A DNA stretch of 64,000 nucleotides from Felis catus (taxonomy: Eukaryota): NCBI RefSeq assembly GCF_018350175.1, contig NC_058381.1, forward strand, positions 39,866,001 through 39,930,000, read 5' to 3'. The translations under genes were made by a program, and so were the position numbers. The notes beneath the pieces are model-generated. The model searched no databases. It worked only from the letters and a program-made list of their open reading frames with translations, and had not been told where the DNA came from. Positions within the stretch are counted from its first letter, which is position 1, and each line of letters opens with the position of its first letter. Shown here one piece after another: positions 2,389 through 41,900 of the stretch.

Positions 2389-2985
2389 CTAGCAACAGCT
2401 GGGGCGGCAGCAGCTGGACACACAGCAGGTGGGGCGGCAGCAGGTGGTCCGGCAGCAGGTGGTCTGGCAGCAGGTGGGGCGGCAGCAAGGCTGGCAGCAG
2501 CTGGAGCCACAGCAATTCGAGCCACAGCCGCTGGAACCCCCACAGCAGGGGCGGCAGCAACTGGACACACAGCAGGTGGGGCGGCAGCAGGTGGTCCGGC
2601 AGCAGGTGGTCTGGCAGCAGGTGGGGCGGCAGCAGGGCTGGCAGCAGCTGGAGCCACAGCAGCTGGAACCCCCACAGCAGGGCCGGCAGCAGCTAGAGAT
2701 GCAGCAGCTGGGCCTGCAGCAGCTGGAACCACAGCAGCTGGGGCGGCAGCAAGTGGTCCTGCAGCAGGTGGTCTGGCAGCAGGTGGGGCGGCAGCAAGGC
2801 TGGCAGCAGCTGGAGCCACAGCAGCTGGAACCCCCACAGCAGGGGCGGCAGCAGCTGGAGCCACAGCAGCTGGGGCGACAGCAGGTGGTCCTGCAGCAGG
2901 TGGTCTGGCAGCAGCTGGGGCGGCAACAAGTCTCCTGGCCACAGCCCTGGTCAGAGCAGACGGAGCCACAACACGAGTTGACCAT
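2389..2985 (-). CDS. KRTAP4: Keratin-associated protein 4 family (ultra-high-sulfur), type A, copy 1; 198 aa, intronless
   Basis: Starts [31 protein letters not shown], the KRTAP4 N-terminal signature. Built of CCxxx pentapeptides; ~39% Cys by hand count. ATG in ACCATGG context at 2985, TATA ~80 bp upstream, AATAAA downstream. The exact paralog number cannot be assigned. Confidence 0.93.
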
Positions 2986-3065
2986 GGTGTCAGAGGGTGG
3001 AGGTTCTGGGATGGTTTCCAGGAGAGTAGGGGCTTGAGTCTGATGTCTCCTCGTGCCATGGCCTC

Positions 3066-3072
3066 TTATATA
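3066..3072 (-). promoter_or_regulatory. TATA box of type A gene (also 26411-26417, 49783-49789)
   Basis: TATATAA(GAGGC) on the minus strand ~80 bp upstream of the ATG; conserved in type B. Confidence 0.85.
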
Positions 3073-3090
3073 CTGCCCGTCCATGGTGAG

Positions 3091-3129: not shown

Positions 3130-5296
3130 AACTAATTATCAGATTACACAATAATGTTTGTGCATGTAATGGTTTAAACTTGTGGGGAACAAAATTTCTT
3201 TTCTCGATGTGATGAATTCTCTCTGGTCTGTGTTTCCTCCTGATTCACACCCACTGGCATCTTCCTGACCACTTTCTCCTCATCTTCCTCCACCGTGGGC
3301 TGTCACGTGATAGGTGGCATTTGCAATTACATTCCGTACTCTCCCTCCTGTATCCCCTAGCAGGTAGGATAAGGGCCGTCCTATTTTTGGTGGTGCATTT
3401 CTTCCAATGGTCAGTGGCATGAGTAATGATCTGCATGTGACAAGAAGAAAAGGCCCTCTTTATGGCGGCAGTTTGGAGCAAAGGGGACAGCTGTATATTT
3501 GTATGACGTTGCCGATTTCTAGCCACTGGACTGGGTTTTTTTGGATGTTTCTACCTTGGATCACGTCCTCTAGCCTACAACCGTGGCAGACAATTATCTG
3601 TATGGTTCCCATCACTGCCATGCTTCATGGTTCATGAAGTGTTAACCTTGGTGTCATGTATGTTTGGTTTTATTTCTCCAGATGCTCTTATCTTGTGGAA
3701 GACATTGCTTTACTTTTGTTTCTTACTCTTTTTTTAATATGAAATTTGTTGTCAAATTGGTTTCCATACAACACCCAGTGCTCATCCCAACAGGTGCCCT
3801 CCTTAATACCCATCACGAACCCACCCCTCCCTCCCATCCCCCACCCCCCCATCAACCCTCAGTTTGTTCTCAGTTTTTAAGAGTCTCTTATCTTTTGGCT
3901 CCCTCCCTCTCTAACCTTTCTTTTTCCCTTCCCCTCCCCCATGGTCTTCTGGTAAGTTTCTCAGGATCCACATAAGAGTGAAAACATATGGTATCTGTCT
4001 TTGTATGACTTATTTCACTTAGCATAACACTCTTTTCACTTCGCATAATACTCTCCAGTTCCATCCATGTTGCCACAAAAGGGCATATTTCATTCTTTCT
4101 CGTTGCCACGTAGTATTCCATTGTGTATATAAACCATAAATTCTTTATCCTTTCATCAGTTGGTGGACATTTAAAGAGTCTTTCCATAATTTGGCTATTG
4201 TTGAAAGTGCTGCTGTAAACATTGGGGTACAAGTGCCCCTGTGCATCAGCACTCCTGTATCCCTTGGGTAAATTCCTAGCAGTGCTATTGCTGGGTCATA
4301 GGTAGATCTATTTTTAATTTTCTGAGGAACCTCCACACTGTTTTCCAGAGAGGCTGCACCAGTTTGCGTTCCCACCAACAGTGCAAGAGGGTTCCTGTTT
4401 CTCCACATCCTCACCAGCATCTGTAGTTTCCCGATTTGTTCCTTTTTGCCACTCTGACTGGCGTGAGGTAGTATCTCAGTGCGGTTTGGATTGTGTTTCC
4501 CTCATGAGGAGCGACGTTGAGCATCTTTTCATGTGTCTGTTGGCCATCTGGGTGTCTTCTTTAGAGAAGTGTCTATTCATGTTTTCTGCCCATTTCTTCA
4601 CTGGATTATTTGCTTTTCGGGTGTGGAGTTTGGTGAGCTCTTTATAGATTTTGGATACTAGCCGTTTGTCCGACATGTCATTTGCAAATATCTTTTCCCA
4701 TTCCGTTGGTTGCCTTTTAGTTTTGTTGATTGTTTCCTTTGCAGTGCAGAAGCTTTTTATCTTCATGAGGTCCCAATAGTTCATTTTTGCTTTTAATTCC
4801 CTTGCCTTTGGAGATGTGTCAAGTAAGAAATTTCTGCGGCTGAGGTCAGAGAGGTGTTCTCCCGCTTCCTCCTCTAGGGTTTTGATGGTTTCCTGTCTCA
4901 CATTCTGGTCCTTTATCCATTTTGAGTTTATTTTTGTGAATGGTGTAAGAAAGTGGTCTAGTTTCATCCTTCTGCATGTTGCTGTTGAGTTCTCCCAGCA
5001 CCATTTGTTAAAGAGACCATCTTTTTTCCGTTGGATGTTCTTTCCTGCTTTGTCAAAGGTTAGTTGGCCATACTTTTGTGGGTCTAATTCTGGGGTTTCT
5101 ATTCTATTCCATTGGTCTATGTGTCTGTTTTTGTGCCCATACCGTGCTGTCTTGATGATTATAGCTTTGTAGTAGAGGCTAAAGTCTGGGATTGTGATGG
5201 CTCCCGCTTTGGTCTTCTTCTTCAAAATTACTTTGGCTATTCGGGGTCTTTTGTGGTTCCATACACATTTTAGGATTGCTTGTTCTAGCTTCGGGA

Positions 5297-6181
5297 NNNN
5301 NNNNNNNNNNNNNNNNNNNNNNNNNNNNNNNNNNNNNNNNNNNNNNNNNNNNNNNNNNNNNNNNNNNNNNNNNNNNNNNNNNNNNNNNNNNNNNNNNNNN
5401 NNNNNNNNNNNNNNNNNNNNNNNNTTCTTCAATTTCCTTCGTAAGCTTTCTATAGTTTTCAGCAGACAGATCTTTTACATCTTTGTGTAGGTTTATTCCT
5501 AGGTATTTTATGCTTCTTGGTGCAATTGTGAATGGAATCAGTTTGTTTATTTGTCTTTCTGTTGCTTCATTATTAGTGTATAAGAATGCAACTGATTTCT
5601 CTACATTGAGTTTGTATCCTGCGACTTTGCTGAATTCATGTATCACTTCTAGCAGACTTTTGGTGGAGTCTTTCGTGTTTTCCATGTATAATATCGTGTC
5701 ATCTGCAAAAAGTGAAGGCTTGACTTCATCGTTGCCAATTTTGATGTTTGATGTTTCCTTTTGTTGTCTGATTGCTGATGCTAGCACTTCCAACACTATG
5801 TTAAACAACAGCGGTGAGAGTGGACATCCCTGTCGTGTTCCTGATCACAGGGGGAAAGCTCTCAGTGTTTCCCCATTGAGGATGATATTAGCTGTGGGCT
5901 TTTCATAGATGGCTTTTATGATGTTTAGGTATGTTCCTTCTATCCCGACTTTCTCGAGGGTTTTTAATTAAGAAAGGATGCTGAATTTTGTCAAATCCTT
6001 TTTCTGCATCGATGCACAGGATCATATGGTTCTTNNNNNNNNNNNNNNNNNNNNNNNNNNNNNNNNNNNNNNNNNNNNNNNNNNNNNNNNNNNNNNNNNN
6101 NNNNNNNNNNNNNNNNNNNNNNNNNNNNNNNNNNNNNNNNNNNNNNNNNNNNNNNNNNNNNNNNNNNNNNNNNNNNNNNNN
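5297..6181. other. N runs: 5297-5424, 6035-6181, 17955-18179, 28643-28774, 29379-29603, 41321-41551, 52015-52146, 52751-52975
   Basis: They fall at homologous positions in each copy and essentially preserve the offsets. Confidence 0.9.
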
Positions 6182-7694
6182 TTGCATCCTTATTCATCAG
6201 GGATATTGGCCTGTAGTTTTCTTTTTTTTTTTTTTGCTGGGTCTCTGTCTGGTTTAGGAATCAGAGTAATGCTGGAAGTTTCCCTTCCCTTTCTATTTTT
6301 TGGAATAGGTTGAGAAGGACAGGTATTATCTCTGCTTTGAATGTCTGGTAGAATTCCCCTGGGTAGGCATCTGGTCCTGGACTCTTATTTGTTGGGAGAT
6401 TTTTGATAGCTGATTCAATTTCTTTGCTGGTTATGGGTCTGTTCAAGTTTTCTATTTCTTCCTGTTTGAGTTTGGGAAGTGTGTGGGTGCTTAGGAATTT
6501 GTCCATTTCCTCCAGGTTGTCCAGTGTGTTGGCAGGACATAGTATTTTTCATAGTATTCCCTGATAATTGCTTGTATTTCTGAGGGATTGGTTGTAATAA
6601 TTCCATTTTCATTCACGATTTTGTCTATTTGGATGATCTCCCTTTTCTTTTTGAGAAGCCTGGCTGGAGGTTTATCAATTTTGTTTATTTTTTCAAGAAA
6701 CCAACACTTGGTTTCATTGATCTGCTGTACAGTCTTTTTAGATTCTATATTGTTTATTTCTGCTGTGCTCTTTATTATTTCTCTTCTTCTGCTGGGTTTG
6801 GGGTGTCTTTGCTGTTCTGCTTCTGTTTCCTTTAGGTGTGCTGTTAGATTTTGTATTTGGGATTTTTCTTGTTTCTTGAGATAGGCCTGGATTGTGATGT
6901 ATTTTCCTCTCAGGACTGCCTTCGCTGTGTCCCAAAGCGTTTGTATTGTTATATTTTCATTTTCGTTTGTTTCCGTATAGTTTTTAATTTCTTCTCTGAT
7001 TGCCTGGTTGACCCATTCATTCTTTAGTAAGGTGTTCTTTAACCCCTATGCTTTTGGAGGTTTTCCAGACTTTTTCCTGTGGTTGATTTCAAGATTCATA
7101 GCATTGTGGTCTGAAAGTGTGCACGGTATGATCTCAAGTCTTTTATACTTATGAAGGGCTGTTTTGTGAGCCAGTATGTGATCTATCTTGGAGAATGTTC
7201 CACGTGCATTCGAGAAGAAAGTATATTCTGTTGCTTTGGGATGCAGAGTTCTAAATATATCTGTTAAGTCCGTCTGATCCAATGTATCATTCAGGGCCCT
7301 TGTTTCTTTTCTGGTCCTGTGTCTAGATGATCTATCCGTTACTGTAAGTGGAGTGTTAAAGTCCCCTGCAATGACCACATTCTTATCAATAAAGTTGCTT
7401 ATGTTTGTGATTAATTGTTTTATATATTTGGGGGCTCCCATATTCAGTGCATAGACATTTATAATTGTTGGCTCTTCCTGATGGATAGACCCTGAAATTA
7501 TTACATAATGCCCTTCTTCATCTCTTGTTACGGCCTTTAATTTAAAGTCTAGTTTGTCTGATGTAAGTATGGCTACTCCAGCTTTCTTTTGACTTCCAGT
7601 AGCATGATAGATAGTTCTCCATCCCCTCACTTTCAATCTGAAGATCTTCTCAGGTTTAAAATGAGTCTCTTCTAGACAGCAAATAGATGGGTCT

Positions 7695-7742
7695 TGTTTT
7701 GTTTTGTTTTGTTTTGTTTTGTTTTGTTTTGTTTTGTTTTGT
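7695..7742. repeat. (GTTTT)n microsatellite inside the L1 ORF2 endonuclease region
   Basis: Directly visible; same length in all three copies. Confidence 0.95.
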
Positions 7743-10195
7743 TGTTTTTATCCATTCTGATACCCTATGTCTTCTGGTTGGAGCATTTAGTCCATTGACA
7801 TTTAGTGTTATTATAGAAAGACATGGGTTTAGGGTCATCATGATGTCTGTAGGTTTCATGCTTGTAGTGATATCTCTGGTACTTTGTGGTCCTTGAACAT
7901 TTCACTCACAGAATCCCCTTTAGGATCTCTTGTAGGGCTGGTTTAGTGGTGATGAATTCCTTCAGTTTTTGTTTGTTTGGGAAGACGTTTATTTCTCCTT
8001 CTATTCCAAAGGACAGACTTGCCGGATAAAGGATTCTCGGCTGCATATTTTTTCCGTTCATCACATTGAAGATTTCCTGCCATTCCTTTCTGGCCTGCCA
8101 AGTTTCAGTAGACAGGTCTGTCACTAGTCTTATCGGTCTCCCTTTATATGTTAGAGCGTGTTTATCCCTAGCTGCTTTCAGAATTTTCTCTTTCTCCTTG
8201 TGTTTTGCCAGTTTCACTATGATACGTCGTGCAGAAGATCGATTCAAGTTACGTCTGAAGTGAGTTCTCTGTGCCTCTTGGATTTCAGTGCCTTTTTCCT
8301 TCCCCAGATCAGGGAAGTTCTCAGCTATGATTTCTTCAATTACACCTTCAGCCCCTTTCTCTCTGTCTTCCTCTTCTGGAATTCCTAGTATACGGATATT
8401 GTTGCGTTTTATTGCATCACTTAGTTCTCTAATTCTCCCCTCATACTCCTGGACTTTTTTATCTCTTTTTCTCAGCTTCCTCTTTTTCCATAATTTTATC
8501 TTCTAATTCACCTGTTCTCTCCTCTGCCTATTCAATCCGAGCTGTGGTCGCCTCCCTTTTATTTTGCACCTCATTTATAGCATTATTTAGCTCCTCCTGA
8601 CTATTTCTTAGTCCCTTGATCTCTGTAGCAATAGATTCTCTGCTGTCCTCTACACTTTTTTCAAGCCCAGCGATGAGTTTTAGGACTATTATTCTAAATT
8701 CTCTTTCCGCTATATTGCTTAAATCGTTTTTGATCAATTCGTTAGCTGTTGCTACTTCCTGGAGTTTCTTTTGAGGAGAATTCTTCCGTTTCGTCATTTT
8801 GGATAGTCCCTGGGGTGGTGCGGAACTGCAGGGCACTTCCCCTGTGCTGTCTGGAGTAACTTGTGTTGGTGGGCGGGGCCGCAGTCAGACCAGATGTCTG
8901 TCCCCAGCCCACCGCTGGGGCCACAGTCAGACTGGTGTGTACCTTATCTTCCCCTCGCCCAGGGGCAGGACTCACTGTGGAGTGGAGTGGCCCCTGTGTG
9001 GGCTACTTGCACACTGCCAGGCTTGTGGTGCTGCTTTCATGGGATCTGGCGTATTAACCGGGGTGGATCCGCAAGGTGCACAGGGGCGGGAGGGGCGGGC
9101 TCAGCTCGCTTTGCTGTCGGTGGTCCCCTGAGGGAGGGGCCCTGAAGCACCAGGGAGGGAGGGTGACCCGTCCGAGGGATGGATCCACAGAAGCACAGCG
9201 CTGGGTGTTTGTGCGGTGCAAGCAAGTTCGGTGAACTGGTTCCCTTTGGGGTTTTGGCTGGGGGATGGGAGAGGGAGATGGCGCTGGCCAGCGCCTTGGT
9301 TCACCGCGGAGCTGAGCTCTTGTCTTCCAGGGCTCAACACCTCTCCCTCCCGGTGTCCTCTCGCCCTCCCTCTCTCCGAGCAGAGCTGTTGACTTATAAC
9401 ATGCCGGATGTTCAGTCCCGCTGGCTGTCAGAACTCATGCAGTCCGGCCCCTCCGCTTTTGCAAGCCAGACTCGGGGGCTCTGCCTTGCCGGGCGGGCTT
9501 CCCCTCCACCACCCCGGCTACCTCTCGCCAGTCCGTGCAGCCCGTCCCGCCTCTCCGCCCTTCCTACCCTCTTCCGTGGGCCTCTTGTCTATGCTTGGCT
9601 CCAGAGAGTCCATTCTGCTAGTCTTCTGGTGGTTTGCTGGGTTATTTAGGCAGGTGTGGGTGGAATCTAAGTGATCAGCCGGACGAGGTGAGCCCAGCGT
9701 ACTCCTACGCCTCCATCTTCTCCCTGTTTCTTATCTTATTCTTAATAAAATTATTCTGCATCAATTCTGGAAAAAAACAGACAAGTTTGAATATTCAGCA
9801 AGTTCCTCTCCTGAGGATTTACCTTTTGCTGGCAAATCTACAGCAAACAGTTTTTGGATCTATTTCAAATGTGAATGGAATGTAGTCAATTCGGGTTCTT
9901 TTAGTTACTATTTCTGCTTATTCTCCATTTTGTGATAGTCCAACATAGCACACAGCAAGTCTTTTGAAAGACTTATTACATATGGTTGAGACACATCCGG
10001 GAAGACCACACATAGAGACCTACTACTTTGTTCTGTTCATTTTAGCATTGGGGAAGTGCCTCTCTCAAATTACTGCCAGGTTTTAAAGCATGTATGTTGA
10101 GTGGATTTGTTGAGATAGACACATTGACAGTTACTGGCATTACAGATGTGATGTGGAGTCTCCTACCCAGGTATTTACAGTTAACTGAAAAGATT

Positions 10196-10197
<2 letters not shown>

Positions 10198-10240
<43 letters not shown>
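10198..10240. repeat. (CA)n microsatellite, longer in copies 2 and 3
   Basis: Directly visible. Confidence 0.95.
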
Positions 10241-10241
<1 letters not shown>

Positions 10242-10399
10242 CTTTAATAAAATTTGAAACAGTTACATCAAAGGTGGGAATAGTAGTGTAATTTAAGTAA
10301 AGAGTTGTGTTTTAGGCAAATTAGCCAAGATGACAGTTTAGTAAAGACAGAGATTTTATTCATAAATAATTGTAGTCACCATTTCTCACTTACTTTTAC

Positions 10400-11205
10400 G
10401 ATTTAGTATAAATTTTAGATGAAATTTACACACATTGGAATGCACAAATCCTAACTGTATTCATCCAGTGTATTACGTTTTCAAAAACTGATGCACATCC
10501 ATGTAATCCCCACATTTATCAAGAAGAAGAACATGCCCTTAGACCAAAAGGTCCCCACTTGTCATTTAGTAAACTCCCTGATGCCAGAGGCAATTGCCGT
10601 CTCAATACATTTCTCACCGTCACATTGTTTTGATCTAGAACTCCAAACAAATGATAATATAGTATAATTTCTGTTCTGTCCTCCACTTAGCTTGGCACAT
10701 GCTAATGTTGATGCAGGTGTCACTAGATCAGACCTGTCCTAACAAAGTACCAAGGTTTGTGATAGCTATTACCAATTACTTTCATGGTAGGGTAACCAAC
10801 TTTCATTTAAGCTCATCATTTTTAATAACATAAACAGAGTAAGAAATTGAGTTCCTCCTGGTTTTCAAAAAAATTTCATATTGTGGAAAACATACATATA
10901 CTAAAACGTGTAAAACATATAAATACAAAAATCATTATGGAGCAAATCGTCTCTATACACAACACTTGAGTCGAGAAATAGAACACTGCTCTCAAGATGG
11001 CTCTTCCTATGTCTTTTCTTGGTCATAATTCTCCTTCTATCTTATAGATGGCTACTATGCTGATTCCTCAAGTAACTATTTCATCTATTTTCTTTACAGT
11101 TTTATAACCTAGGTATGACCCCGAAACAATAGAGTTTGCTTTTAAATGTTTTCACATTTTATATAAGGAAATCTTAGTATATATGTGTTTGGATTCTTTC
11201 ACTCA
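10400..11205 (-). mobile_element. Old L1M(E)-type 3' end remnants (paralogous 17040-17430 and 21915-22185)
   Basis: Motifs aatgcacaaatcctaactgta, atccatgtaatc, cagaggcaa, tctagaact, agaaatagaaca are typical of antisense L1ME 3' ends. Confidence 0.5.
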
Positions 11206-15001: not shown

Positions 15002-15553
15002 CTAGCAACAGCTGGGGCGGCAGCAGCTGGACACACAGCAGGTGGGGCGGCAGCAGGTGGTCCGGCAGCAGGTGGTCTGGCAGCAGGTGGGGCGGCAGCA
15101 AGGCTGGCAGCAGCTGGAGCCACAGCAATTAGAGCCACAGCAGCTGGAGCCCCCACAGCAGGGGCGGCAGCAGCTGGACACACAGCAGGTGGGGCGGCAG
15201 CAGGTGGTCCTGCAGCAGGTGGTCTGGCAGCAAGGCTGGCAGCAGCTGGAGCCACAGCAGCTGGAACCCCCACAGCAGGGGCGGCAGCAGGTGGTCCTGC
15301 AGCAGGTGGTCTGGCAGCAGGTGGGGCGGCAGCAGCTAGAGATGCAGCAGCTGGGCCTGCAGCAGCTGGAGCCACAGCAATTAGAGCCACAACAGCTGGA
15401 GCCACAGCAGGAGGGGCGGCAGCAGCTGGACACACAGCAGGTGGGCCGGCAGCAGGTGGTCCTGCAGCACGTTGTCTGGCAGCAGGTGGGGCGGCAGCAA
15501 GGCTGGCAGCAGCTGGAGCCACAGCAGCTGGAGCCACAACAGGAGTTGACCAT
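15002..15553 (-). CDS. KRTAP4: KRTAP4-like protein, type B, copy 1; 183 aa
   Basis: [28 protein letters not shown]... with the same 5'UTR, TATA and 3'UTR as type A; lacks the [11 protein letters not shown] segment. Confidence 0.9.
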
Positions 15554-15635
15554 GGTATCAGAGGGTGGAGGTTCTGGGCTGGTTTCCAGGAGAGTGAGGG
15601 GCTGGACTTTGGAAGTCTCCTTGTGCCCTGGCCTC

Positions 15636-15642
15636 TTATATA
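15636..15642 (-). promoter_or_regulatory. TATA box of type B gene (also 39002-39008, 62374-62380)
   Basis: TATATAA(GAGGC) on the minus strand ~83 bp upstream of the ATG. Confidence 0.85.
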
Positions 15643-16584
15643 CTGCTCGTACCGGGTGATTTGTCAACACATCTTCCTTGTGTTTGTTTACCTAATATTT
15701 AAGTAATTGTCAGATTACAGAATAATGTGTGTCTATGTACTGGTTGAAACTGATGGCAAAGAGGTTTTCTTGTTGGATGTGAGAAACTCTGCGTGGTCTG
15801 CTTTTCCTCCTGACCTACACCCACTGGCATCCTCTGGACCACTCTCCTCTTCTTCCTCCACAGCAGGCTGTCATGTGGTAGGTGGCATTTGCAATTACAT
15901 TTCTTGTTTTCCTCTCCTACACCCCTAGCAGCAAGGGGTTAAGGCAAACCTGTTTTGGATTGTGCATTTCTTCCAATGGTCAGTGGGAGGGAACCCCATC
16001 TGCATAGTGTGGAGGTGGCATGGGACAAGAGGAAAAGGTCCTATTTTATGGGTCAGTTTTAATGAGGAAGGGAGTCAGTGTCTATGAACACGTGATGTTG
16101 GTAACCTCTGCCACTGGAATGGGTTTTCTTGTTTCTAACTTTAATGTTTCTGCCTTTGGATCACGTTCTCTACCCCAAAGCCACGGCAGACAATTGGGTG
16201 CATGGTTCCCATCACTGCCACGATTTGTAGTTCATTGAGTGTTATCATTGCCGTCATGTATCTTTGCATTACATTTCTCTGGAAGGTCTTTAGACTGTGG
16301 AAGACACCGCCTTTACAAATTCTTATCTCATTCTTAATAAAGCATATTCTTCAATGGAGGAGAAAAAAAAAGTTGAATAATCAGAATGCACTCTCCTCTG
16401 ATCTTATCTCCATAGCTGGGAATTCTAGAGTGCACATTTGTTTGGATCCATTTAAAATGTGAATGGATTTTAGTGTAGTCAGGTTACATAGTTGGTCTTT
16501 ATACTTATTCCCCATTTACTAATAGTCCAACTTGAGGATGCAGCAAGTATCTGAAGGGCTCATAAGATATGGTGCGACAAATCT

Positions 16585-16681
16585 CAGAAGTTCTGAATAT
16601 GGCGCTAGGGGTGTGGGCTGAAATTTGGCATTTCTGCCAAGTACCCAGATGATGCTGAAGGCCCCAGGATGACACTTAGAG
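16585..16681 (+). mobile_element. MER5-like hAT DNA transposon fragment (also ~39951-40047, ~63323-63419)
   Basis: ggggtgtgggctgaaatttggcatttctgccaagtacccagatgatgctga resembles the MER5A core; mostly deleted in the other monomer (~9995-10020). Confidence 0.6.
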
Positions 16682-17599
16682 GCCTGTTCCTTTGTCCTGA
16701 TCCTTTAAGCTCTGAGAGGTGCCTCTGTGTAGTTCCTGTGTGCTTTTAAAGCCGACTTGTTGAATGGCTTTAAAGAGATACACACATTGCCAGTTGTTGA
16801 TGTTCTATGTACCGTTTAGGGTCTCCTCCCCGGAAATGCACAGGCTACTGAGAAGCCCCACCATGAACACACTTACAGATAACTGCAATGTAGTATTGAA
16901 AGAACCGTCAAAGGAGTTCGTAGTAGTATGATTTAACTAGAAGAATTGTGTTTGAGGCAAATCAGCCAAGAAGACAGTTTGGTAAAACCATAGAGTTACT
17001 CATAAATAAACTACTTAGTGTTTCTTGTTTACATTTTGTGATTTATTTCGCAACGTAGAAGGGATTTACACACAGTTGAATCTATTTATCCTAAGTGTAC
17101 TCATCCATAGTGATGAGTTATGATACACAGAAGCAGGTCCATGTAATCCCCCCATCTCTCAGTAGAACATTTCCATTATGGCAGAAAGTCCCCACTTGTC
17201 CCTTACTAAAGTCTGAACTACCATAGAGGCAATCACTGTTTTCATGTATTTTTCACTGTAGAATAGTTTTGATCTAGACCTTTGAATAGATGATATGTAG
17301 TATATATCTCTAGCATATATACTGTTTCTAGAGAATATGTTATTTCTCCTCTGTTTTGCACCATTAACATGCCTATGCCTATGCGAATCACTAACACTGG
17401 TGCATATATTAGTGGTTCATTTTGTGCTATATGAGAGAAGTATCAAGACTTATCCTAACTGTTTCCAATGTATGTTATGGTAGGGTAACCAGGCATTCCT
17501 TAAGCCCATCTTTCATTTTTAATCTTAAATAGAGATGCATTTCAGTTCACCCTAAATTTTTTGAAAAAGTCTTTCATATTATTTAAAATGCACATATGC

Positions 17600-17954
17600 A
17601 GTGTGTGCAGCATGGTCTTGGCTTTGGGAGTTGATTCCCTTGGTTTGTCACTTGCATGCAGCACTTGGTGCTTGTCCCATTGGGTGCCTCCTCTGTGCCC
17701 ATCACCCATTTTCCCCACCCCACTGACCCTCAGTTTGTTCTCTGTATTTAGGACTCTGTTGGGCTTTGCCTCCCTCTCTAGAGACAGAGGCTGTTAAGTG
17801 CAGAGAACTAACTAAGGTCCCTGGAGGGGCTTGAGTGGGGGGATGGGCTAAGTGGGTGATGGCATTGGGGAGGGCACTTGTTTGGAAGGGCACTGGGTGT
17901 TGTATGTAAGTGAGGAATAACTAAATTCTATTGCTGAAACCATTACTACCCTGT
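17600..17954. mobile_element. Two L1 3'UTR fragments in inverted (fold-back) arrangement (also ~40966-41320)
   Basis: 17600-17780 resembles the minus-strand L1 3' end at 3765-3912; 17785-17954 resembles the plus-strand L1 3' end at 21170-21295. Confidence 0.8.
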
Positions 17955-18683
17955 NNNNNNNNNNNNNNNNNNNNNNNNNNNNNNNNNNNNNNNNNNNNNN
18001 NNNNNNNNNNNNNNNNNNNNNNNNNNNNNNNNNNNNNNNNNNNNNNNNNNNNNNNNNNNNNNNNNNNNNNNNNNNNNNNNNNNNNNNNNNNNNNNNNNNN
18101 NNNNNNNNNNNNNNNNNNNNNNNNNNNNNNNNNNNNNNNNNNNNNNNNNNNNNNNNNNNNNNNNNNNNNNNNNNNNNNNTGAGTGGGTGGCCCCTCGCTG
18201 TTTCCATTGCAGATCCTAGATCTATAGAAACTATACAATTCATCTACAGAGGGAAAAGAAACAAAAAACCAGTATGATCCCTGATGTCACAATATAGGTC
18301 TACATGTCACTAGTTTGTAGACAACCAGCCTTGATTTCCATTTCTGGCTGCACTCTGAAAGCTGGGTTCCTGGCCATGTAAGAGGAAGTGCTTAAGGAGG
18401 CCAAGACATGGCCAAGTAAGTACTGGGAATTCATCTGCGCATGGCAAACAGAATAAACCCATTATAAAAGGCATTATTTTAGCTTAAGAGCAATATATTC
18501 CCATGTGTTTAAGTAAGAGTAGGTGGTATTTTTACTTTACATTTTGGCAGATTTGTTGTGAAAAAATTCAGGCCATACCACATCATCTGAAGAGCAGAGA
18601 ATACGTCCGATAGTTGGGCGAGGATCTGTCCCTTGGTACTGAGCTAGAGTTAGAAGGAAAGCATAGACATTGAAGAGCCCATC

Positions 18684-20891
18684 AAGAAATAGAAAATTTG
18701 AACAGACCCATAACCAGTAAAGAAATCGAATTAGTAGTCAAAAATGTCCCAAAACACAAGAGTCCAGAGCCAGATGGCTTTCCAGGGGACTTCTACCAAA
18801 CATTTAAGGAAGAGTTCATACCTATTCTCTTGAAGCTGTTCCAAAAAATAGAAATGAAAGGAAAACTTTCATACCCTTTCTATGAAGCCAGCATTACCTT
18901 GATTCCAAAACCAACCCCATTAAAAAGGGGAACTATAGACCAATTTCCCTGATGAACATGGATGCAAAAATCCTCAAGATATTAGCCAACTGGATCCAAC
19001 AATACTTAAAAAAAAAAAATTATTCACCTCGCCCAAGTGGGATTTATACCTGGGATGCAGGGCTGGTTCAATATCTGCAAAACAATTGACGTGATTCATC
19101 ACATCAATGGAAGAAAGTTCAAGAACCCTATGATCCTCTCAATAGATGCAGAGAAAGCATTTGACAAGATACAGCGTCCTTTCTTGATAAAAACCCTCAA
19201 GAAAGTAGGGGCAGAAGGATCATACCTCGAGGTCATAAAAGCCATATATGAACAACCCAACACTAATATCATCCTTAATGGGGAAACACTGAGAGCTGTC
19301 CCCCTCCGGTCAGGAACACGACAGGGATGTCCACTCTCACTACTGTTATTCAACATGGTATTGGAAGTCTTAGCCTCAGCAGTCAGACAACACAAAGAAA
19401 TAAAGGGCATCCAAATGGGCCAGGAGGGAGTCAAACTTTCACTCTTTGCAGATGACTGATACTCTATATGGAAAACCCAAAAGATTCCACTAAAAAACTG
19501 CTAGAACTGATTCATGAATTCAGCAAGGTTGCAGTATATAAAATCAATGCACAGAAATCGGTTGCATTCCTACACACCGACAATGAAGCAACAGAAAGAG
19601 AAGTCAATGAATCGATCCTGTTTACAACTGCACGCAAAACCATAAGATACCCAGGAATAAATCTAACCAAAGAAGTGAAAAATCTATACACTGAAAACTA
19701 TAGAAAGCTTATGAAAGAAATTGGAGAAGACAAACCCCAAAAAGGAAAAATATTCCATGCTCCTGGATAGGAAGAACAAATATTGTTAAAAGGTCAATAC
19801 TACCGAAAGCAACCTACATATTCAATGCAATCCCTATCAAAATAACACCAGCGTTCTTCACAGAGGTAGAACAAACAATCCTAAAATTTGTGTAGAACCA
19901 GAAAAGACCCCGAATAGCCAAAGCATTCTTGAAGAAGAAACCCAATGCAGGAGACATCACAATTCTGGACATCAAGCTGTATTACATAGCTGTAATCATC
20001 AAGACAGTATGGCACAAAAACAGACACTCAGGTCAGTGAAGCACAATAGAGAACCCAGAAAGGGATCCACAAACTTATGACCAACTAATCTTTGACAAAG
20101 CAGGAAAGAATATCCAATGGAATAAAGACAGTCTCTTCAGCAAGTGGTGCTGAGAAAACTGGGCAGCGACATGCAGAAAAACGAACCTGGACCACTTTCT
20201 TACACCATCCACAACAATAAACTCAAAATGGATGAAAGGCCTGAATGTAAGACAGGAAGCCATCAAAATCCCCAAAGAGAAAGCAGGCAAAAACCTCTTT
20301 GACCTTGGCCACAGCAGCTTCTTACTCAGCATGTCTCTGGAGGCAAGGGAGACAAAAGCAAAAATGAACTACTGGGACCTCATCAAAATAAAAGTTTCTG
20401 CACAGCAAAGAAAACAATCAGCAAAACTAACAGGCAACGCACGGAATGGGAGAAGATATTTGCAAATGACATATCAGATAAAGGGTTAGTATCCAAAATC
20501 TCTAAAGAAGTTATCAAACTCAACACCCCCAAAACAAATAATCCAGTGAAGACATGGGCAAAAGGCATGAACAGACACTTCTCCAAAGGAGACATCTGGG
20601 AAATACAAATCAAAGCCACCATGAGATACCACCTCACACCTATCAGAACGGCTAACATTAACGACTCAGCTATAAACAGATGTTGGCGAGGATGTGGAGA
20701 AAGAGGATCTCTTTTGCACTGCTGGTGGGAATGCAAACTGGTGCAGCCACTCTGGAAACCAGTATGGAGGTTCCTCAACAAATTAAAAGTAGAACTACCC
20801 CACGACCCAGCAATTGCACTACTAGGTATTTACCCAAGGGATACAGGTGGGCTGTTTCGAAGGGACGTATGCACCCTAACGTTTGTATATA

Positions 20892-20934
<43 letters not shown>

Positions 20935-21352
20935 ATATATATACACACACACACATCCACAATGGAGTATTACTCGGCAATCAAAAAGAATGGAATCTTG
21001 CCATTTGCAACTATGTGGATGGAACTAGAGGATATTATGCTAAGCAGAACTAGCAAGTCAGAGAAAGACAAATATTACATGACTTCACTCATATGAGGAC
21101 TTTAAGATACAAACCAGATGAACATAAGGGAAGGGAAGAAAAATATAAAAACAGGGAGGGGGACAAAAACATAAGAGACTCATAAATATGGAGAACACAG
21201 AGAGGGTTACTGGAGGGGTTGAGGGAGGGGGGATGGGCTAAATGGGTAAGGGACATTAAGGAATCTACTCCTGAAATCACTGTTACACTATCTGCTAACT
21301 AACTTGGATGTAAATAAAAAAAAATAAATTAAATAAAAATTGTTTTTTAAAA
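18684..21352 (+). mobile_element. 5'-truncated carnivore LINE-1 (~2.7 kb)
   Basis: ORF2 RT fragments ([37 protein letters not shown]), 3'UTR and A-rich tail; TSD AAGAGCCCATC at 18673-18683 and 21353-21363. Confidence 0.96.
20885..20956. repeat. (TA)/(TG)n/(TA)/(CA)n compound microsatellite within L1
   Basis: Directly visible. Confidence 0.9.
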
Positions 21353-21693
21353 AAGAGCCCATCTGTGACCCACTGGCAAATGCAATCTCTTTCTAAGCCT
21401 TTCTAAATCTCTTACCCACTGGTAAATGTCAGTGGATCTTACCATGAAAAATGAGAAATAGAAGAAAGCTTACCACTTCTCAAATCCTATTAGAAAAAAC
21501 AACTGTTGTATATTGTATTTTTCCACGGAGGAGCCAGCTCACATATTAACATATGAATTCTTTTTCTTGCGAAGACGCCATGGAAGCATTCATTTGACTA
21601 ACAACACCCTAATATTGCATTTTTACAATGAAAAAAAATGCACATACGGTGTAAAGCATACAAAGTACATGTACGTGATAAAAAATAGTTATA

Positions 21694-21898
21694 GGGGCGC
21701 CTGGGTGGCTCAGTTGGTTGAGCGTCCAGCTTCAGCTCAGGTCATGATCTCGCTTTCTGTGGGTTCGAGCCCCATGTCGGCCTCTGTGCTGACAGCTCAG
21801 AGCCTGGAGCCTGCATCCGATTCTGTGTCTCCCTCTCCGGCCCCTCCCCCGCTCGTGCCCTGTCTCTCTCTCGCTCCCTCAAAAATAAGTAAACATTA
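21694..21898 (+). mobile_element. tRNA-derived CanSINE, feliform type (SINEC_Fc-like)
   Basis: GGGGCGCCTGGGTGGCTCAG head, GGTTCGAGCCC B box, TGCTGACAGCTCAGAGCCTGGAGCCTG body, CT tract and A tail; 15-bp TSD aaaaaatagttatag at 21680-21694 and 21899-21913. Confidence 0.96.
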
Positions 21899-22192
21899 AA
21901 AAAATAGTTATAGAGCAAACATCCACGTATCAAAACCTGGAGTCAAGAAATAGAACCTTGTTACTACTAAGAAGGCTCTTCTATGCCCTTTCTTGACCAC
22001 GAACACTTTTCCACCCTCCAGATGATTATTATGCTGATTTTTCAAGTAATCTTTTCATTTATTTTTCTTGCAGTTTCATTACCTATGTAGGCATCCCTAT
22101 ATGATACAGTTTTATTTCGCATCTTTCTGAATTTTTATAGGAATGAAATCTCACTGTAAGTGTAACTTTTTTACTCAATGTTATGGAAGAGT

Positions 22193-38919: not shown

Positions 38920-41900
38920 GGTATCAGAGGGTGGAGGTTCTGGGCTGGTTTCCAGGAGAGTGAGGGGCTGGACTTTGGAAGTCTCCTTGTGCCCTGGCCT
39001 CTTATATACTGCTCGTACCGGGTGATTTGTCAACACATCTTCCTTGTGTTTGTTTACCTAATATTTAAGTAATTGTCAGATTACAGAATAATGTGTGTCT
39101 ATGTACTGGTTGAAACTGATGGCAAAGAGGTTTTCTTGTTGGATGTGAGAAACTCTGCGTGGTCTGCTTTTCCTCCTGACCTACACCCACTGGCATCCTC
39201 TGGACCACTCTCCTCTTCTTCCTCCACAGCAGGCTGTCATGTGGTAGGTGGCATTTGCAATTACATTTCTTGTTTTCCTCTCCTACACCCCTAGCAGCAA
39301 GGGGTTAAGGCAAACCTGTTTTGGATTGTGCATTTCTTCCAATGGTCAGTGGGAGGGAACCCCATCTGCATAGTGTGGAGGTGGCATGGGACAAGAGGAA
39401 AAGGTCCTATTTTATGGGTCAGTTTTAATGAGGAAGGGAGTCAGTGTCTATGAACACGTGATGTTGGTAACCTCTGCCACTGGAATGGGTTTTCTTGTTT
39501 CTAACTTTAATGTTTCTGCCTTTGGATCACGTTCTCTACCCCAAAGCCACGGCAGACAATTGGGTGCATGGTTCCCATCACTGCCACGATTTGTAGTTCA
39601 TTGAGTGTTATCATTGCCGTCATGTATCTTTGCATTACATTTCTCTGGAAGGTCTTTAGACTGTGGAAGACACCGCCTTTACAAATTCTTATCTCATTCT
39701 TAATAAAGCATATTCTTCAATGGAGGAGAAAAAAAAAGTTGAATAATCAGAATGCACTCTCCTCTGATCTTATCTCCATAGCTGGGAATTCTAGAGTGCA
39801 CATTTGTTTGGATCCATTTAAAATGTGAATGGATTTTAGTGTAGTCAGGTTACATAGTTGGTCTTTATACTTATTCCCCATTTACTAATAGTCCAACTTG
39901 AGGATGCAGCAAGTATCTGAAGGGCTCATAAGATATGGTGCGACAAATCTCAGAAGTTCTGAATATGGCGCTAGGGGTGTGGGCTGAAATTTGGCATTTC
40001 TGCCAAGTACCCAGATGATGCTGAAGGCCCCAGGATGACACTTAGAGGCCTGTTCCTTTGTCCTGATCCTTTAAGCTCTGAGAGGTGCCTCTGTGTAGTT
40101 CCTGTGTGCTTTTAAAGCCGACTTGTTGAATGGCTTTAAAGAGATACACACATTGCCAGTTGTTGATGTTCTATGTACCGTTTAGGGTCTCCTCCCCGGA
40201 AATGCACAGGCTACTGAGAAGCCCCACCATGAACACACTTACAGATAACTGCAATGTAGTATTGAAAGAACCGTCAAAGGAGTTCGTAGTAGTATGATTT
40301 AACTAGAAGAATTGTGTTTGAGGCAAATCAGCCAAGAAGACAGTTTGGTAAAACCATAGAGTTACTCATAAATAAACTACTTAGTGTTTCTTGTTTACAT
40401 TTTGTGATTTATTTCGCAACGTAGAAGGGATTTACACACAGTTGAATCTATTTATCCTAAGTGTACTCATCCATAGTGATGAGTTATGATACACAGAAGC
40501 AGGTCCATGTAATCCCCCCATCTCTCAGTAGAACATTTCCATTATGGCAGAAAGTCCCCACTTGTCCCTTACTAAAGTCTGAACTACCATAGAGGCAATC
40601 ACTGTTTTCATGTATTTTTCACTGTAGAATAGTTTTGATCTAGACCTTTGAATAGATGATATGTAGTATATATCTCTAGCATATATACTGTTTCTAGAGA
40701 ATATGTTATTTCTCCTCTGTTTTGCACCATTAACATGCCTATGCCTATGCGAATCACTAACACTGGTGCATATATTAGTGGTTCATTTTGTGCTATATGA
40801 GAGAAGTATCAAGACTTATCCTAACTGTTTCCAATGTATGTTATGGTAGGGTAACCAGGCATTCCTTAAGCCCATCTTTCATTTTTAATCTTAAATAGAG
40901 ATGCATTTCAGTTCACCCTAAATTTTTTGAAAAAGTCTTTCATATTATTTAAAATGCACATATGCAGTGTGTGCAGCATGGTCTTGGCTTTGGGAGTTGA
41001 TTCCCTTGGTTTGTCACTTGCATGCAGCACTTGGTGCTTGTCCCATTGGGTGCCTCCTCTGTGCCCATCACCCATTTTCCCCACCCCACTGACCCTCAGT
41101 TTGTTCTCTGTATTTAGGACTCTGTTGGGCTTTGCCTCCCTCTCTAGAGACAGAGGCTGTTAAGTGCAGAGAACTAACTAAGGTCCCTGGAGGGGCTTGA
41201 GTGGGGGGATGGGCTAAGTGGGTGATGGCATTGGGGAGGGCACTTGTTTGGAAGGGCACTGGGTGTTGTATGTAAGTGAGGAATAACTAAATTCTATTGC
41301 TGAAACCATTACTACCCTGTNNNNNNNNNNNNNNNNNNNNNNNNNNNNNNNNNNNNNNNNNNNNNNNNNNNNNNNNNNNNNNNNNNNNNNNNNNNNNNNN
41401 NNNNNNNNNNNNNNNNNNNNNNNNNNNNNNNNNNNNNNNNNNNNNNNNNNNNNNNNNNNNNNNNNNNNNNNNNNNNNNNNNNNNNNNNNNNNNNNNNNNN
41501 NNNNNNNNNNNNNNNNNNNNNNNNNNNNNNNNNNNNNNNNNNNNNNNNNNNTGAGTGGGTGGCCCCTCGCTGTTTCCATTGCAGATCCTAGATCTATAGA
41601 AACTATACAATTCATCTACAGAGGGAAAAGAAACAAAAAACCAGTATGATCCCTGATGTCACAATATAGGTCTACATGTCACTAGTTTGTAGACAACCAG
41701 CCTTGATTTCCATTTCTGGCTGCACTCTGAAAGCTGGGTTCCTGGCCATGTAAGAGGAAGTGCTTAAGGAGGCCAAGACATGGCCAAGTAAGTACTGGGA
41801 ATTCATCTGCGCATGGCAAACAGAATAAACCCATTATAAAAGGCATTATTTTAGCTTAAGAGCAATATATTCCCATGTGTTTAAGTAAGAGTAGGTGGTA

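What the first reader, a model, noticed from the sequence alone, without database searches (positions are those of the whole stretch)
17600..17954. L1 fold-back hairpin with same-strand A>G excess on both arms: candidate genomic fossil of ADAR A-to-I hyper-editing
Seen: two ~170 bp L1 3'UTR pieces lie back to back in opposite orientation with almost no spacer and are complementary along their length. Against the in-window L1 at ~3765-3912, the left arm shows repeated A>G on the + strand: catacaacacccagtgctcatccc becomes catgcagcacttggtgcttgtccc; aatacc becomes tgtgcc; tttaag becomes tttagg. Several changes are CA>TG, as expected from A>G followed by CpG decay. Against the L1 at ~21170-21262, the right arm also shows A>G on +: gagact>gaggct, aaata>aagtg, ctaaat>ctaagt, attaagg>attgggg. 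One arm is L1-antisense and the other L1-sense, yet the bias follows the + strand. Known: ADAR edits both arms of long dsRNA hairpins and reverse transcription fixes I as G; APOBEC3 would give G>A instead. Inference: an edited + strand transcript was reverse-transcribed into the germline and later amplified with the KRTAP unit (copy at ~40966-41320). Caveat: the in-window L1s are different subfamilies, so some differences may be subfamily-diagnostic.
Basis: partly seen in the sequence, partly recalled or inferred. Interest (0 to 1): 0.85.

Follow-up and report, generated by a model that had tools for sequence, protein, structure and literature searches.

The report
L1 fold-back hairpin with one-strand A-to-G bias
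Two old L1 tail pieces lie head to head at the start of a retroposed insertion in a keratin-associated-protein gene cluster, and their differences are skewed towards A-to-G on one strand, which fits an RNA-edited hairpin copied back into DNA but cannot be proved from this window.

Summary
17600-17780 is L1 3'UTR antisense and 17786-17954 is the same L1 region in sense. They pair as a ~170-bp imperfect hairpin with a ~25-nt loop. The copy at 40926-41320 is 100% identical, so it is not independent evidence.

The strand bias is real but rests on few sites. In the well-aligned core, arm-to-arm mismatches are 19 G·U-type against 3 A·C-type on the + strand (p=0.0009; 0.004 with CpG-like doublets collapsed). 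With the in-window L1s as outgroups, A>G is 13/78 against T>C 2/78 (p=0.005). The left arm carries most of it (8/33 against 1/45). The right arm alone is not significant. The rest of the insertion shows no bias.

The hairpin abuts the 5' target-site duplication of a ~4-kb L1-mediated insertion that monomer A lacks, so an RNA intermediate is plausible.

- **Best reading (~0.4):** a + strand transcript with both arms was ADAR hyper-edited and then retroposed.
- **Main rival (~0.3):** the fold-back formed during insertion, by twin priming or snap-back.

No L1 consensus, source locus or reads could be obtained. The scan has not reported this on other DNA.

The parts
17585..17598 (+). Left copy of the target-site duplication AAAATGCACATA(T)G. 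It is preceded by TATTT, giving an L1 endonuclease-type site TTT|AAAA.
   Evidence: Exact 12-mer found at 17585 and 21635 only, plus the duplicated unit. Monomer A has the empty site at about 10899-10924.
17600..17757 (+). Left arm: L1 3'UTR in antisense orientation. It is the paired part of the fold-back and carries most of the + strand A>G changes. It has no poly-T end; its outer end lies about 35 nt short of the L1 tail.
   Evidence: Alignments. Polarised changes are A>G 8, C>T 5, T>C 1, G>A 0. Composition is A 12.7% and G 22.8%, against 21-23% and 9-14% in L1 antisense references.
17758..17785 (+). Loop or junction. About 22 nt of extra L1 antisense sequence continue the left arm (to 17780), followed by GAGAC. 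AGAGAC (17780-17785) sits beside AGAGGC (17786-17791). The centre TCTCTAGAGA is itself a palindrome.
17786..17954 (+). Right arm: the same L1 3'UTR region in sense orientation. It runs into the N run, so its 3' end is not visible.
   Evidence: Polarised changes are A>G 5, G>A 3, T>C 1, C>T 1-2.
17955..18179 (.). N run of 225 bases.
18180..18683 (+). Non-L1 sequence of the outer insertion. It is continuous with 21364-21634 once the nested L1 is removed.
   Evidence: No match to the full-length L1 in monomer A. The nested-L1 TSD defines the join.
18684..21352 (+). Nested 5'-truncated L1 in sense orientation (ORF2 remnant, 3'UTR = ref2, A-rich tail). It has its own 11-bp TSD AAGAGCCCATC at 18673-18683 and 21353-21363.
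   Evidence: ORF2 frame, RVT_1, TSD, and 73-81% identity to the L1 in monomer A.
21364..21634 (+). 3' part of the outer insertion. It ends in a short A run (21631-21634) in front of the right TSD.
21635..21648 (+). Right copy of the target-site duplication AAAATGCACATA(C)G.
40966..41320 (+). Second copy of the hairpin, in the next 23.37-kb unit. It is 100% identical and therefore not independent evidence.

Best explanation
At a source locus elsewhere, two 5'-truncated L1 3'UTR pieces lay head to head. A + strand transcript through them folded into a double-stranded RNA stem of about 170 bp.

Nuclear ADAR then deaminated a large share of the stem adenosines. This turned A-U pairs into I.U pairs, and A.C mismatches into I-C pairs.

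The L1 machinery reverse-transcribed that RNA into monomer B of the KRTAP repeat, reading each I as G. Later, new CpGs decayed and ordinary substitutions and indels accumulated. A second L1 nested inside, and the 23-kb unit was amplified very recently.

Shown here: the fold-back, the hairpin-limited + strand bias, the TSD and empty site, and the nested L1.

Inferred: that both arms were present in the RNA, that ADAR was the agent, and the order of events.
For: 1. Arm-to-arm transitions are G.U-type 19 against A.C-type 3 in the core. Local ts/tv of 0.9-1.4 with 12 transversions predicts about 7 of each.
2. Polarised A>G is 13/78 against T>C 2/78 (p=0.005). A>G makes up 10-13 of 19-25 transitions (p=0.003-0.009).
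3. In L1-sense terms the two arms are biased in opposite directions. A mis-rooted outgroup therefore cannot explain the bias; it follows the + strand.
4. In 17648-17700, 7 of 14 ancestral A became G, near the ~50% seen in ADAR hyper-editing. Every A after T or A was changed, and all A that were kept follow C.
5. A.C and A.A mismatches are almost absent (3 and 0), while U.U (7) and C.C (4) remain. This is expected if A opposite C or A was edited.
6. No bias is seen in the adjoining 2.2 kb of the same insertion.
7. The insertion has a 14-bp TSD at a TTT|AAAA site and an empty paralogous site, so it went through RNA.
8. Precedent exists. Inverted repeats in avian retroviruses were fixed in proviral DNA with nearly 50% of A replaced by G (PMC12925331, its references 169 and 170).
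Against: - The right arm alone is not significant (5/45 against 1/33).
- The 5'-G depletion is not significant (p=0.5).
- The left arm also has 5 C>T, which ADAR does not make. Three of them are CA>TG doublets that an ancestral CpG explains equally well.
- There is an A>T excess of 7 against 1, though about half of these calls lie in the poorly aligned tail.
- The total count of informative sites is only about 40.
- Outgroups are just two in-window L1s, one of them with a deletion.
- The hairpin starts exactly at the 5' TSD, which is what a fold-back made during insertion predicts. A pre-existing hairpin needs the retrocopy's 5' end to fall by chance in the outer ~35 nt of the left arm.
- The A tail is only 4 A.
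- The locus was picked because of its pattern, so the p-values are somewhat flattering.
Confidence: 0.4

Rival explanations
1. The fold-back was made during this insertion event. It would be a 5'-truncated L1 RNA carrying a 3' transduced flank, inserted with a 5' inversion. The mechanism is either twin priming from the top-strand end at the TSD or snap-back of the cDNA end. The arms were then born alike, and no RNA ever held both. The + strand bias would come from something else: deamination of an exposed cDNA strand, ADAR acting on the DNA strand of an RNA:DNA hybrid, error-prone fill-in, or chance.
For: - The inverted arm abuts the 5' TSD and has no poly-T end, which is the standard anatomy of 5'-inverted L1 insertions.
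- The right arm is an L1 3' end followed by non-L1 sequence and a second A run, as in a 3' transduction.
- 5' inversions are frequent for L1 in cis and show microhomology at the 5' junction (PMC2912911).
- Snap-back inverted duplications at L1 insertion ends are seen experimentally (10.1101/2024.12.14.628481).
- The bias is mainly in the left arm, which in twin priming is the second cDNA.
- ADARs can edit dA in RNA:DNA hybrids (PMC12925331, its reference 166).
- The centre is a short palindrome, TCTCTAGAGA.
Against: - In twin priming the inverted and direct parts are normally adjacent stretches of the RNA. Here they overlap by about 170 nt.
- Arms born identical now differ by about 30%. That is about 15% per arm, at or above the per-lineage divergence of monomers A and B (6-13%), even though the insertion is younger than the A/B split.
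- No established DNA-level process gives A>G on one strand only inside a fold-back.
- Hybrid editing should also give T>C in the right arm, and only 1 is seen.
Confidence: 0.3
2. This is an ordinary pair of old L1 3'UTR fragments. The differences reflect age, indels, CpG decay and subfamily-diagnostic positions. The strand skew is a small-sample fluctuation that was noticed because the reader was looking for patterns.
For: - Both arms have zero CpG, 12-19 transversions and several indels, so they are old.
- Total ts/tv of about 1.8 is not raised.
- Three doublets fit ancestral CpG decay.
- The right arm is not significant, and the ADAR motif test is not significant.
- Only two outgroups are available.
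Against: - After collapsing or removing the doublets the skew remains (16 against 3, p=0.004; 13 against 3, p=0.02).
- + strand A is changed at 21/78 sites against T at 2/78 (p=2e-5).
- The bias follows the + strand rather than L1 sense, so mis-rooting cannot make it.
- There is no skew in neighbouring sequence.
- Two independent L1 insertions truncated within 22 nt of each other, head to head, would be a coincidence.
Confidence: 0.2
3. The + strand hairpin is a selected RNA structure, for example a precursor of small RNAs. Transitions that keep G.U pairing would be tolerated, and those that make A.C would be purged.
For: - The + strand RNA fold has a run of 26 consecutive pairs and is 42 kcal/mol more stable than the - strand fold.
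- A.C-type mismatches are fewer than the neutral expectation.
Against: - Transversions and indels that break pairing are present at about the neutral level (12 in the core). Selection for pairing should remove them too.
- There is no Rfam match anywhere in the window.
- The site is a retro-insertion in a recently amplified repeat.
Confidence: 0.05

Closest known systems
[quoted passage not shown] 1994, as summarised in PMC12925331)
   Same: An inverted repeat in an RNA that is later reverse-transcribed. About half of the adenosines in the paired region are replaced by G, and the change is fixed in DNA.
   Different: Here the carrier would be a cellular transcript moved by L1 proteins into the germline of a mammal, not a retrovirus. 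The event is old and overlaid by later mutation. The unedited parent is not in hand.
5'-inverted L1 insertions (twin priming) and snap-back inverted duplications at L1 insertion ends (PMC2912911; 10.1101/2024.12.14.628481)
   Same: The inverted segment lies directly against the 5' TSD. The target is an L1 endonuclease site. There is possible microhomology at the junctions and a short palindrome at the centre.
   Different: The inverted and direct parts cover the same ~170 nt of L1 rather than adjacent stretches. The arms are about 30% diverged, with a one-strand transition bias.
APOBEC3 G-to-A editing clusters in retrotransposon copies (PMC2873906)
   Same: A cluster of one mismatch type in a retroelement copy, read as a fossil of enzymatic deamination during retrotransposition.
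   Different: The direction and base differ: the main change here is A>G on the transcript strand, not G>A. On the transcript strand G>A is 3 and C>T is 7. Only the left arm's five + strand C>T (G>A in that arm's L1 sense) could be APOBEC-like, and three of them sit in CpG-type doublets.

Membership tests
Genomic fossil of ADAR hyper-editing (edited dsRNA written back by reverse transcription) | A long intramolecular duplex can form on the transcript strand. | tested here: met
   The stem is about 170 bp. The + strand RNA folds at -174.5 kcal/mol, z -6.8.
Genomic fossil of ADAR hyper-editing (edited dsRNA written back by reverse transcription) | A>G clusters lie on the same (transcript) strand in both arms, in excess of T>C. 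| tested here: inconclusive
   Combined, 13/78 against 2/78 (p=0.005). Left arm 8/33 against 1/45 (p=0.004). Right arm 5/45 against 1/33, not significant.
Genomic fossil of ADAR hyper-editing (edited dsRNA written back by reverse transcription) | ADAR neighbour preference: 5' G depleted, 5' U or A favoured. | tested here: inconclusive
   Ancestral 5' G is 2/15 at edited sites against 16/62 at unedited A (p=0.5). 5' T or A is 10/15 against 26/62 (p=0.15).
Genomic fossil of ADAR hyper-editing (edited dsRNA written back by reverse transcription) | The bias is confined to the double-stranded part. | tested here: met
   The nested L1 beside the hairpin, compared with the L1 in monomer A, gives G/A 71 against A/G 76 and T/C 60 against C/T 51. 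That comparison is not polarised.
Genomic fossil of ADAR hyper-editing (edited dsRNA written back by reverse transcription) | The sequence passed through an RNA that held both arms (retrocopy hallmarks). | tested here: inconclusive
   The TSD, the TTT|AAAA site and the empty site in monomer A are met. The A tail is only 4 A. Whether the left arm was in the RNA or was made at insertion cannot be told.
Genomic fossil of ADAR hyper-editing (edited dsRNA written back by reverse transcription) | An unedited parent (source locus or subfamily consensus) has A at the G sites. | not testable with these tools
Scans for carnivore L1 3'UTR found nothing in the metagenome, genome or viral collections. Only two in-window L1s served as outgroups.
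5'-inverted L1 insertion by twin priming | The insertion is flanked by a TSD at an L1 endonuclease site, with the inverted part against the 5' TSD. | tested here: met
5'-inverted L1 insertion by twin priming | The inverted and direct parts are neighbouring stretches of one RNA, with only a small gap or overlap at the junction. | tested here: not met
   The two parts cover the same ~170 nt of the L1 3'UTR.
5'-inverted L1 insertion by twin priming | The direct part ends in the L1 tail, or in a transduced flank with a poly-A. | tested here: inconclusive
   The end of the right arm is hidden in the N run. A non-L1 stretch and a short A run follow.

The most novel reading that the evidence does not exclude
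A cellular hairpin RNA made of two L1 tails was hyper-edited by ADAR. It was then written back into a carnivore germline by the L1 machinery. This locus would be a direct DNA record that A-to-I RNA editing can become heritable sequence change in a mammal.
Probability: 0.35. Interest if true: 0.65.

Novelty: new variant of a known kind. Interest (0 to 1): 0.45.

Why it matters
If the ADAR reading is right, this is a concrete germline case of RNA editing becoming DNA. That route of mutation is known from a few retroviruses, but I found no documented case in a mammalian host genome in the literature searches run here.

It also gives a simple recipe for finding more. Look for inverted repeats inside TSD-flanked retro-insertions whose arm mismatches are G.U-type on the transcript strand.

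If instead the fold-back was made at insertion, the locus is an unusual 5' inversion with a 170-nt overlap and an unexplained one-strand mutation bias. That would bear on how L1 insertion intermediates are processed.

Either way the practical weight is modest. It is one old locus with about 40 informative sites, and nothing suggests it has a function.

Tried and rejected
- **Sequencing runs.** I sent no patterns or letters from that stretch to collection, paper or findings searches. The only library comparison that included it was the whole-window Rfam scan by reference, which found nothing.
- **External L1 outgroups.** Patterns taken only from ref1 and ref2 found 0 matches in metagenome contigs, genome contigs and viral contigs.
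- **My first reading of the left arm.** I thought it ran to a poly-T at about 17560. This is rejected: 17560-17598 is homologous to the empty site in monomer A.
- **My first reading of 18684-21237.** I took it for an inverted KRTAP paralogue of A 3824-6460. This is rejected: both are L1 ORF2 sequence.
- **APOBEC3 on this insertion's own cDNA.** This predicts + strand G>A. Only 3 are seen, against 7 C>T.
- **GC-biased gene conversion and transcription-coupled asymmetry.** The first is strand-symmetric. The second is far too weak, and it would not be confined to the hairpin.
- **N runs** were not filled or inferred from paralogues.

Full report
**Setting**

The window is a tandem array of 23.37-kb units that are 99.8-100% identical. 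Each unit holds two diverged monomers, A and B, at about 83-85% identity. Each monomer has one high-sulfur keratin-associated protein gene, at 2389-3084 (-) and 15002-15670 (-), both matching Keratin_B2_2. The finding lies in monomer B. Its second copy at 40926-41320 is 100% identical and adds no independent evidence. A SINE with the feliform-type sequence sits just downstream, so by my own reading the genome is probably a feliform carnivore.

**What the hairpin is**

- 17600-17780 is L1 3'UTR in antisense orientation.
- 17786-17954 is the same L1 region in sense orientation, and it runs into an N run (17955-18179).
- The arms align to each other over about 150 columns, with 102-109 matches and 4-5 indels.
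- Both arms align to the two other L1 3' ends in the window: ref1 at 3735-4128 (-) and ref2 at 20955-21330 (+).
- The left arm runs about 22 nt further into L1 than the right arm. This gives a loop of about 25 nt around the small palindrome TCTCTAGAGA.
- Left arm, right arm and ref2 share one type of L1 tail, and ref1 has a different one.

**Where it sits**

Comparing monomer B with monomer A shows that B 17599-21634 is an insertion into an empty site at A 10899-10924.

- The insertion is flanked by AAAATGCACATA(T/C)G at 17585 and 21635.
- The target reads TATTT|AAAA, which is an L1 endonuclease-type site.
- Only four A's lie before the right repeat.

Inside the insertion is a nested, 5'-truncated L1 at 18684-21352. 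It has an ORF2 remnant, an RVT_1 match and its own 11-bp repeat AAGAGCCCATC. Without the nested L1, the outer insertion is about 1.36 kb: the hairpin, the N run and 775 bp of non-L1 sequence. The hairpin therefore lies exactly at the 5' end of a retro-insertion.

The apparent 'inverted homology' of B 18684-21237 to A 6460-3824 is only L1 matching L1. Monomer A carries a full-length L1 of about 6 kb at 3735-9728, with an endonuclease domain match.

**The strand bias between the arms**

In the well-aligned core, the arm-to-arm differences read on the + strand are:

| Type | Count |
|---|---|
| G.U-type | 19 |
| A.C-type | 3 |
| Transversions | 12 |

- The binomial p is 0.0009.
- With three CpG-like doublets collapsed it is 0.004, and with them removed 0.02.
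- Stricter or looser alignments give 19:0, 25:4 and 29:8.
- Local ts/tv between monomers A and B is 0.9-1.4. Twelve transversions therefore predict about 7 of each transition type. G.U-type changes are in excess and A.C-type changes are, if anything, short.
- As RNA the + strand folds at -174.5 kcal/mol, with a run of 26 consecutive pairs. The - strand folds at -132.6.

**The strand bias polarised with outgroups**

Using ref1 and ref2 as outgroups (lenient rule):

| Arm | A>G | C>T | T>C | G>A |
|---|---|---|---|---|
| Left (+ strand) | 8 | 5 | 1 | 0 |
| Right (+ strand) | 5 | 2 | 1 | 3 |

- Together, A>G is 13/78 against T>C 2/78 (p=0.005).
- The left arm alone gives p=0.004. The right arm alone is not significant.
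- In L1-sense terms the two arms are biased in opposite directions. An outgroup artefact cannot make this pattern, because it follows the + strand.
- In 17648-17700, 7 of 14 ancestral A became G. Every A after T or A was changed, and all five A that were kept follow C.
- The formal 5'-G test is not significant.
- The left arm has about half the A and twice the G of L1 antisense references.
- The rest of the insertion shows no skew.

**Points that do not fit a simple ADAR story**

- The left arm has five C>T. Three of them are CA>TG doublets.
- A>T is 7 against T>A 1, although about half of those calls lie in the poorly aligned outer tail.
- The right arm's evidence is weak.
- The sample is about 40 sites, and the locus was chosen because of its pattern.

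**How it most likely arose**

*ADAR reading.* This reading explains five things at once: the hairpin-limited bias, its direction on the transcript strand in both arms, the near 50% conversion in one stretch, the near absence of A.C and A.A mismatches while U.U and C.C remain, and the position inside a retro-insertion. It has a precedent in avian retroviruses, where inverted repeats were fixed with nearly half of their A's replaced by G (PMC12925331).

*Main rival.* The fold-back was made at insertion.
- 5' inversions are common for L1 and show microhomology at the 5' junction (PMC2912911).
- Snap-back inverted duplications occur at L1 insertion ends (10.1101/2024.12.14.628481).
- The inverted arm sits just where such a process would put it, with no poly-T end.
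- Against it: the two parts overlap by about 170 nt instead of being adjacent. The arms are more diverged (about 15% each) than most estimates of the older A/B split allow. No established DNA-level process gives this bias.
- ADAR editing of the DNA strand of RNA:DNA hybrids (PMC12925331, its reference 166) is a speculative bridge between the two readings.

I weigh the readings as follows:

| Reading | Weight |
|---|---|
| Edited RNA hairpin, then retroposed | about 0.4 |
| Fold-back made at insertion | about 0.3 |
| Ordinary divergence plus chance | about 0.2 |
| Selected RNA structure | about 0.05 |

**Limits**

- No carnivore L1 sequences could be fetched from any collection.
- The two tests that would settle the matter could therefore not be run: a curated subfamily consensus and the source locus.
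- Rfam has no match in the window.

Noticed in passing
window 59-64000: The window is a tandem array of 23.37-kb units at 99.8-100% identity. Some stretches of 11 kb have no difference at all. Each unit has two older monomers at about 83-85% identity. This is either a very recent amplification or an assembly duplication of a KRTAP repeat.
   Followed up: partly
window 3735-9728 (-): A full-length L1 of about 6 kb is inserted in monomer A only, with ORF1 and ORF2 remnants and an endonuclease domain. B 16316/16320 is the empty site. Two N runs lie inside its ORF2.
   Followed up: partly
window 18684-21352 (+): A 5'-truncated L1 is nested in the outer insertion, with a perfect 11-bp TSD AAGAGCCCATC. 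A (TG)n microsatellite at 20881-20933 interrupts its ORF2.
   Followed up: yes
window 21695-21898 (+): A carnivore tRNA-derived SINE of the feliform type is flanked by a perfect 14-15-bp TSD, AAAAATAGTTATAG at 21681-21694 and 21900-21913, with one more A before each copy. It lies just downstream of the outer insertion and is absent from monomer A.
   Followed up: partly
window 2389-3084 (-) and 15002-15670 (-): There are two intact high-sulfur KRTAP ORFs (231 and 222 aa, Keratin_B2_2) with internal cysteine-rich pentapeptide repeats. The repeat number differs between monomers A and B.
   Followed up: partly
window 16320-17599 vs 9700-10905: The stretch of monomer B just upstream of the insertion is much more diverged from monomer A (about 27%, ts/tv 0.9) than the stretches on either side (about 13%). 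This hints at patchy gene conversion between monomers, or at a different history for this piece.
   Followed up: no
window 17780-17791: At the hairpin centre, AGAGAC is followed directly by AGAGGC. The first hexamer looks like an extra copy of the start of the right arm that kept the A which the right arm has as G.
   Followed up: no
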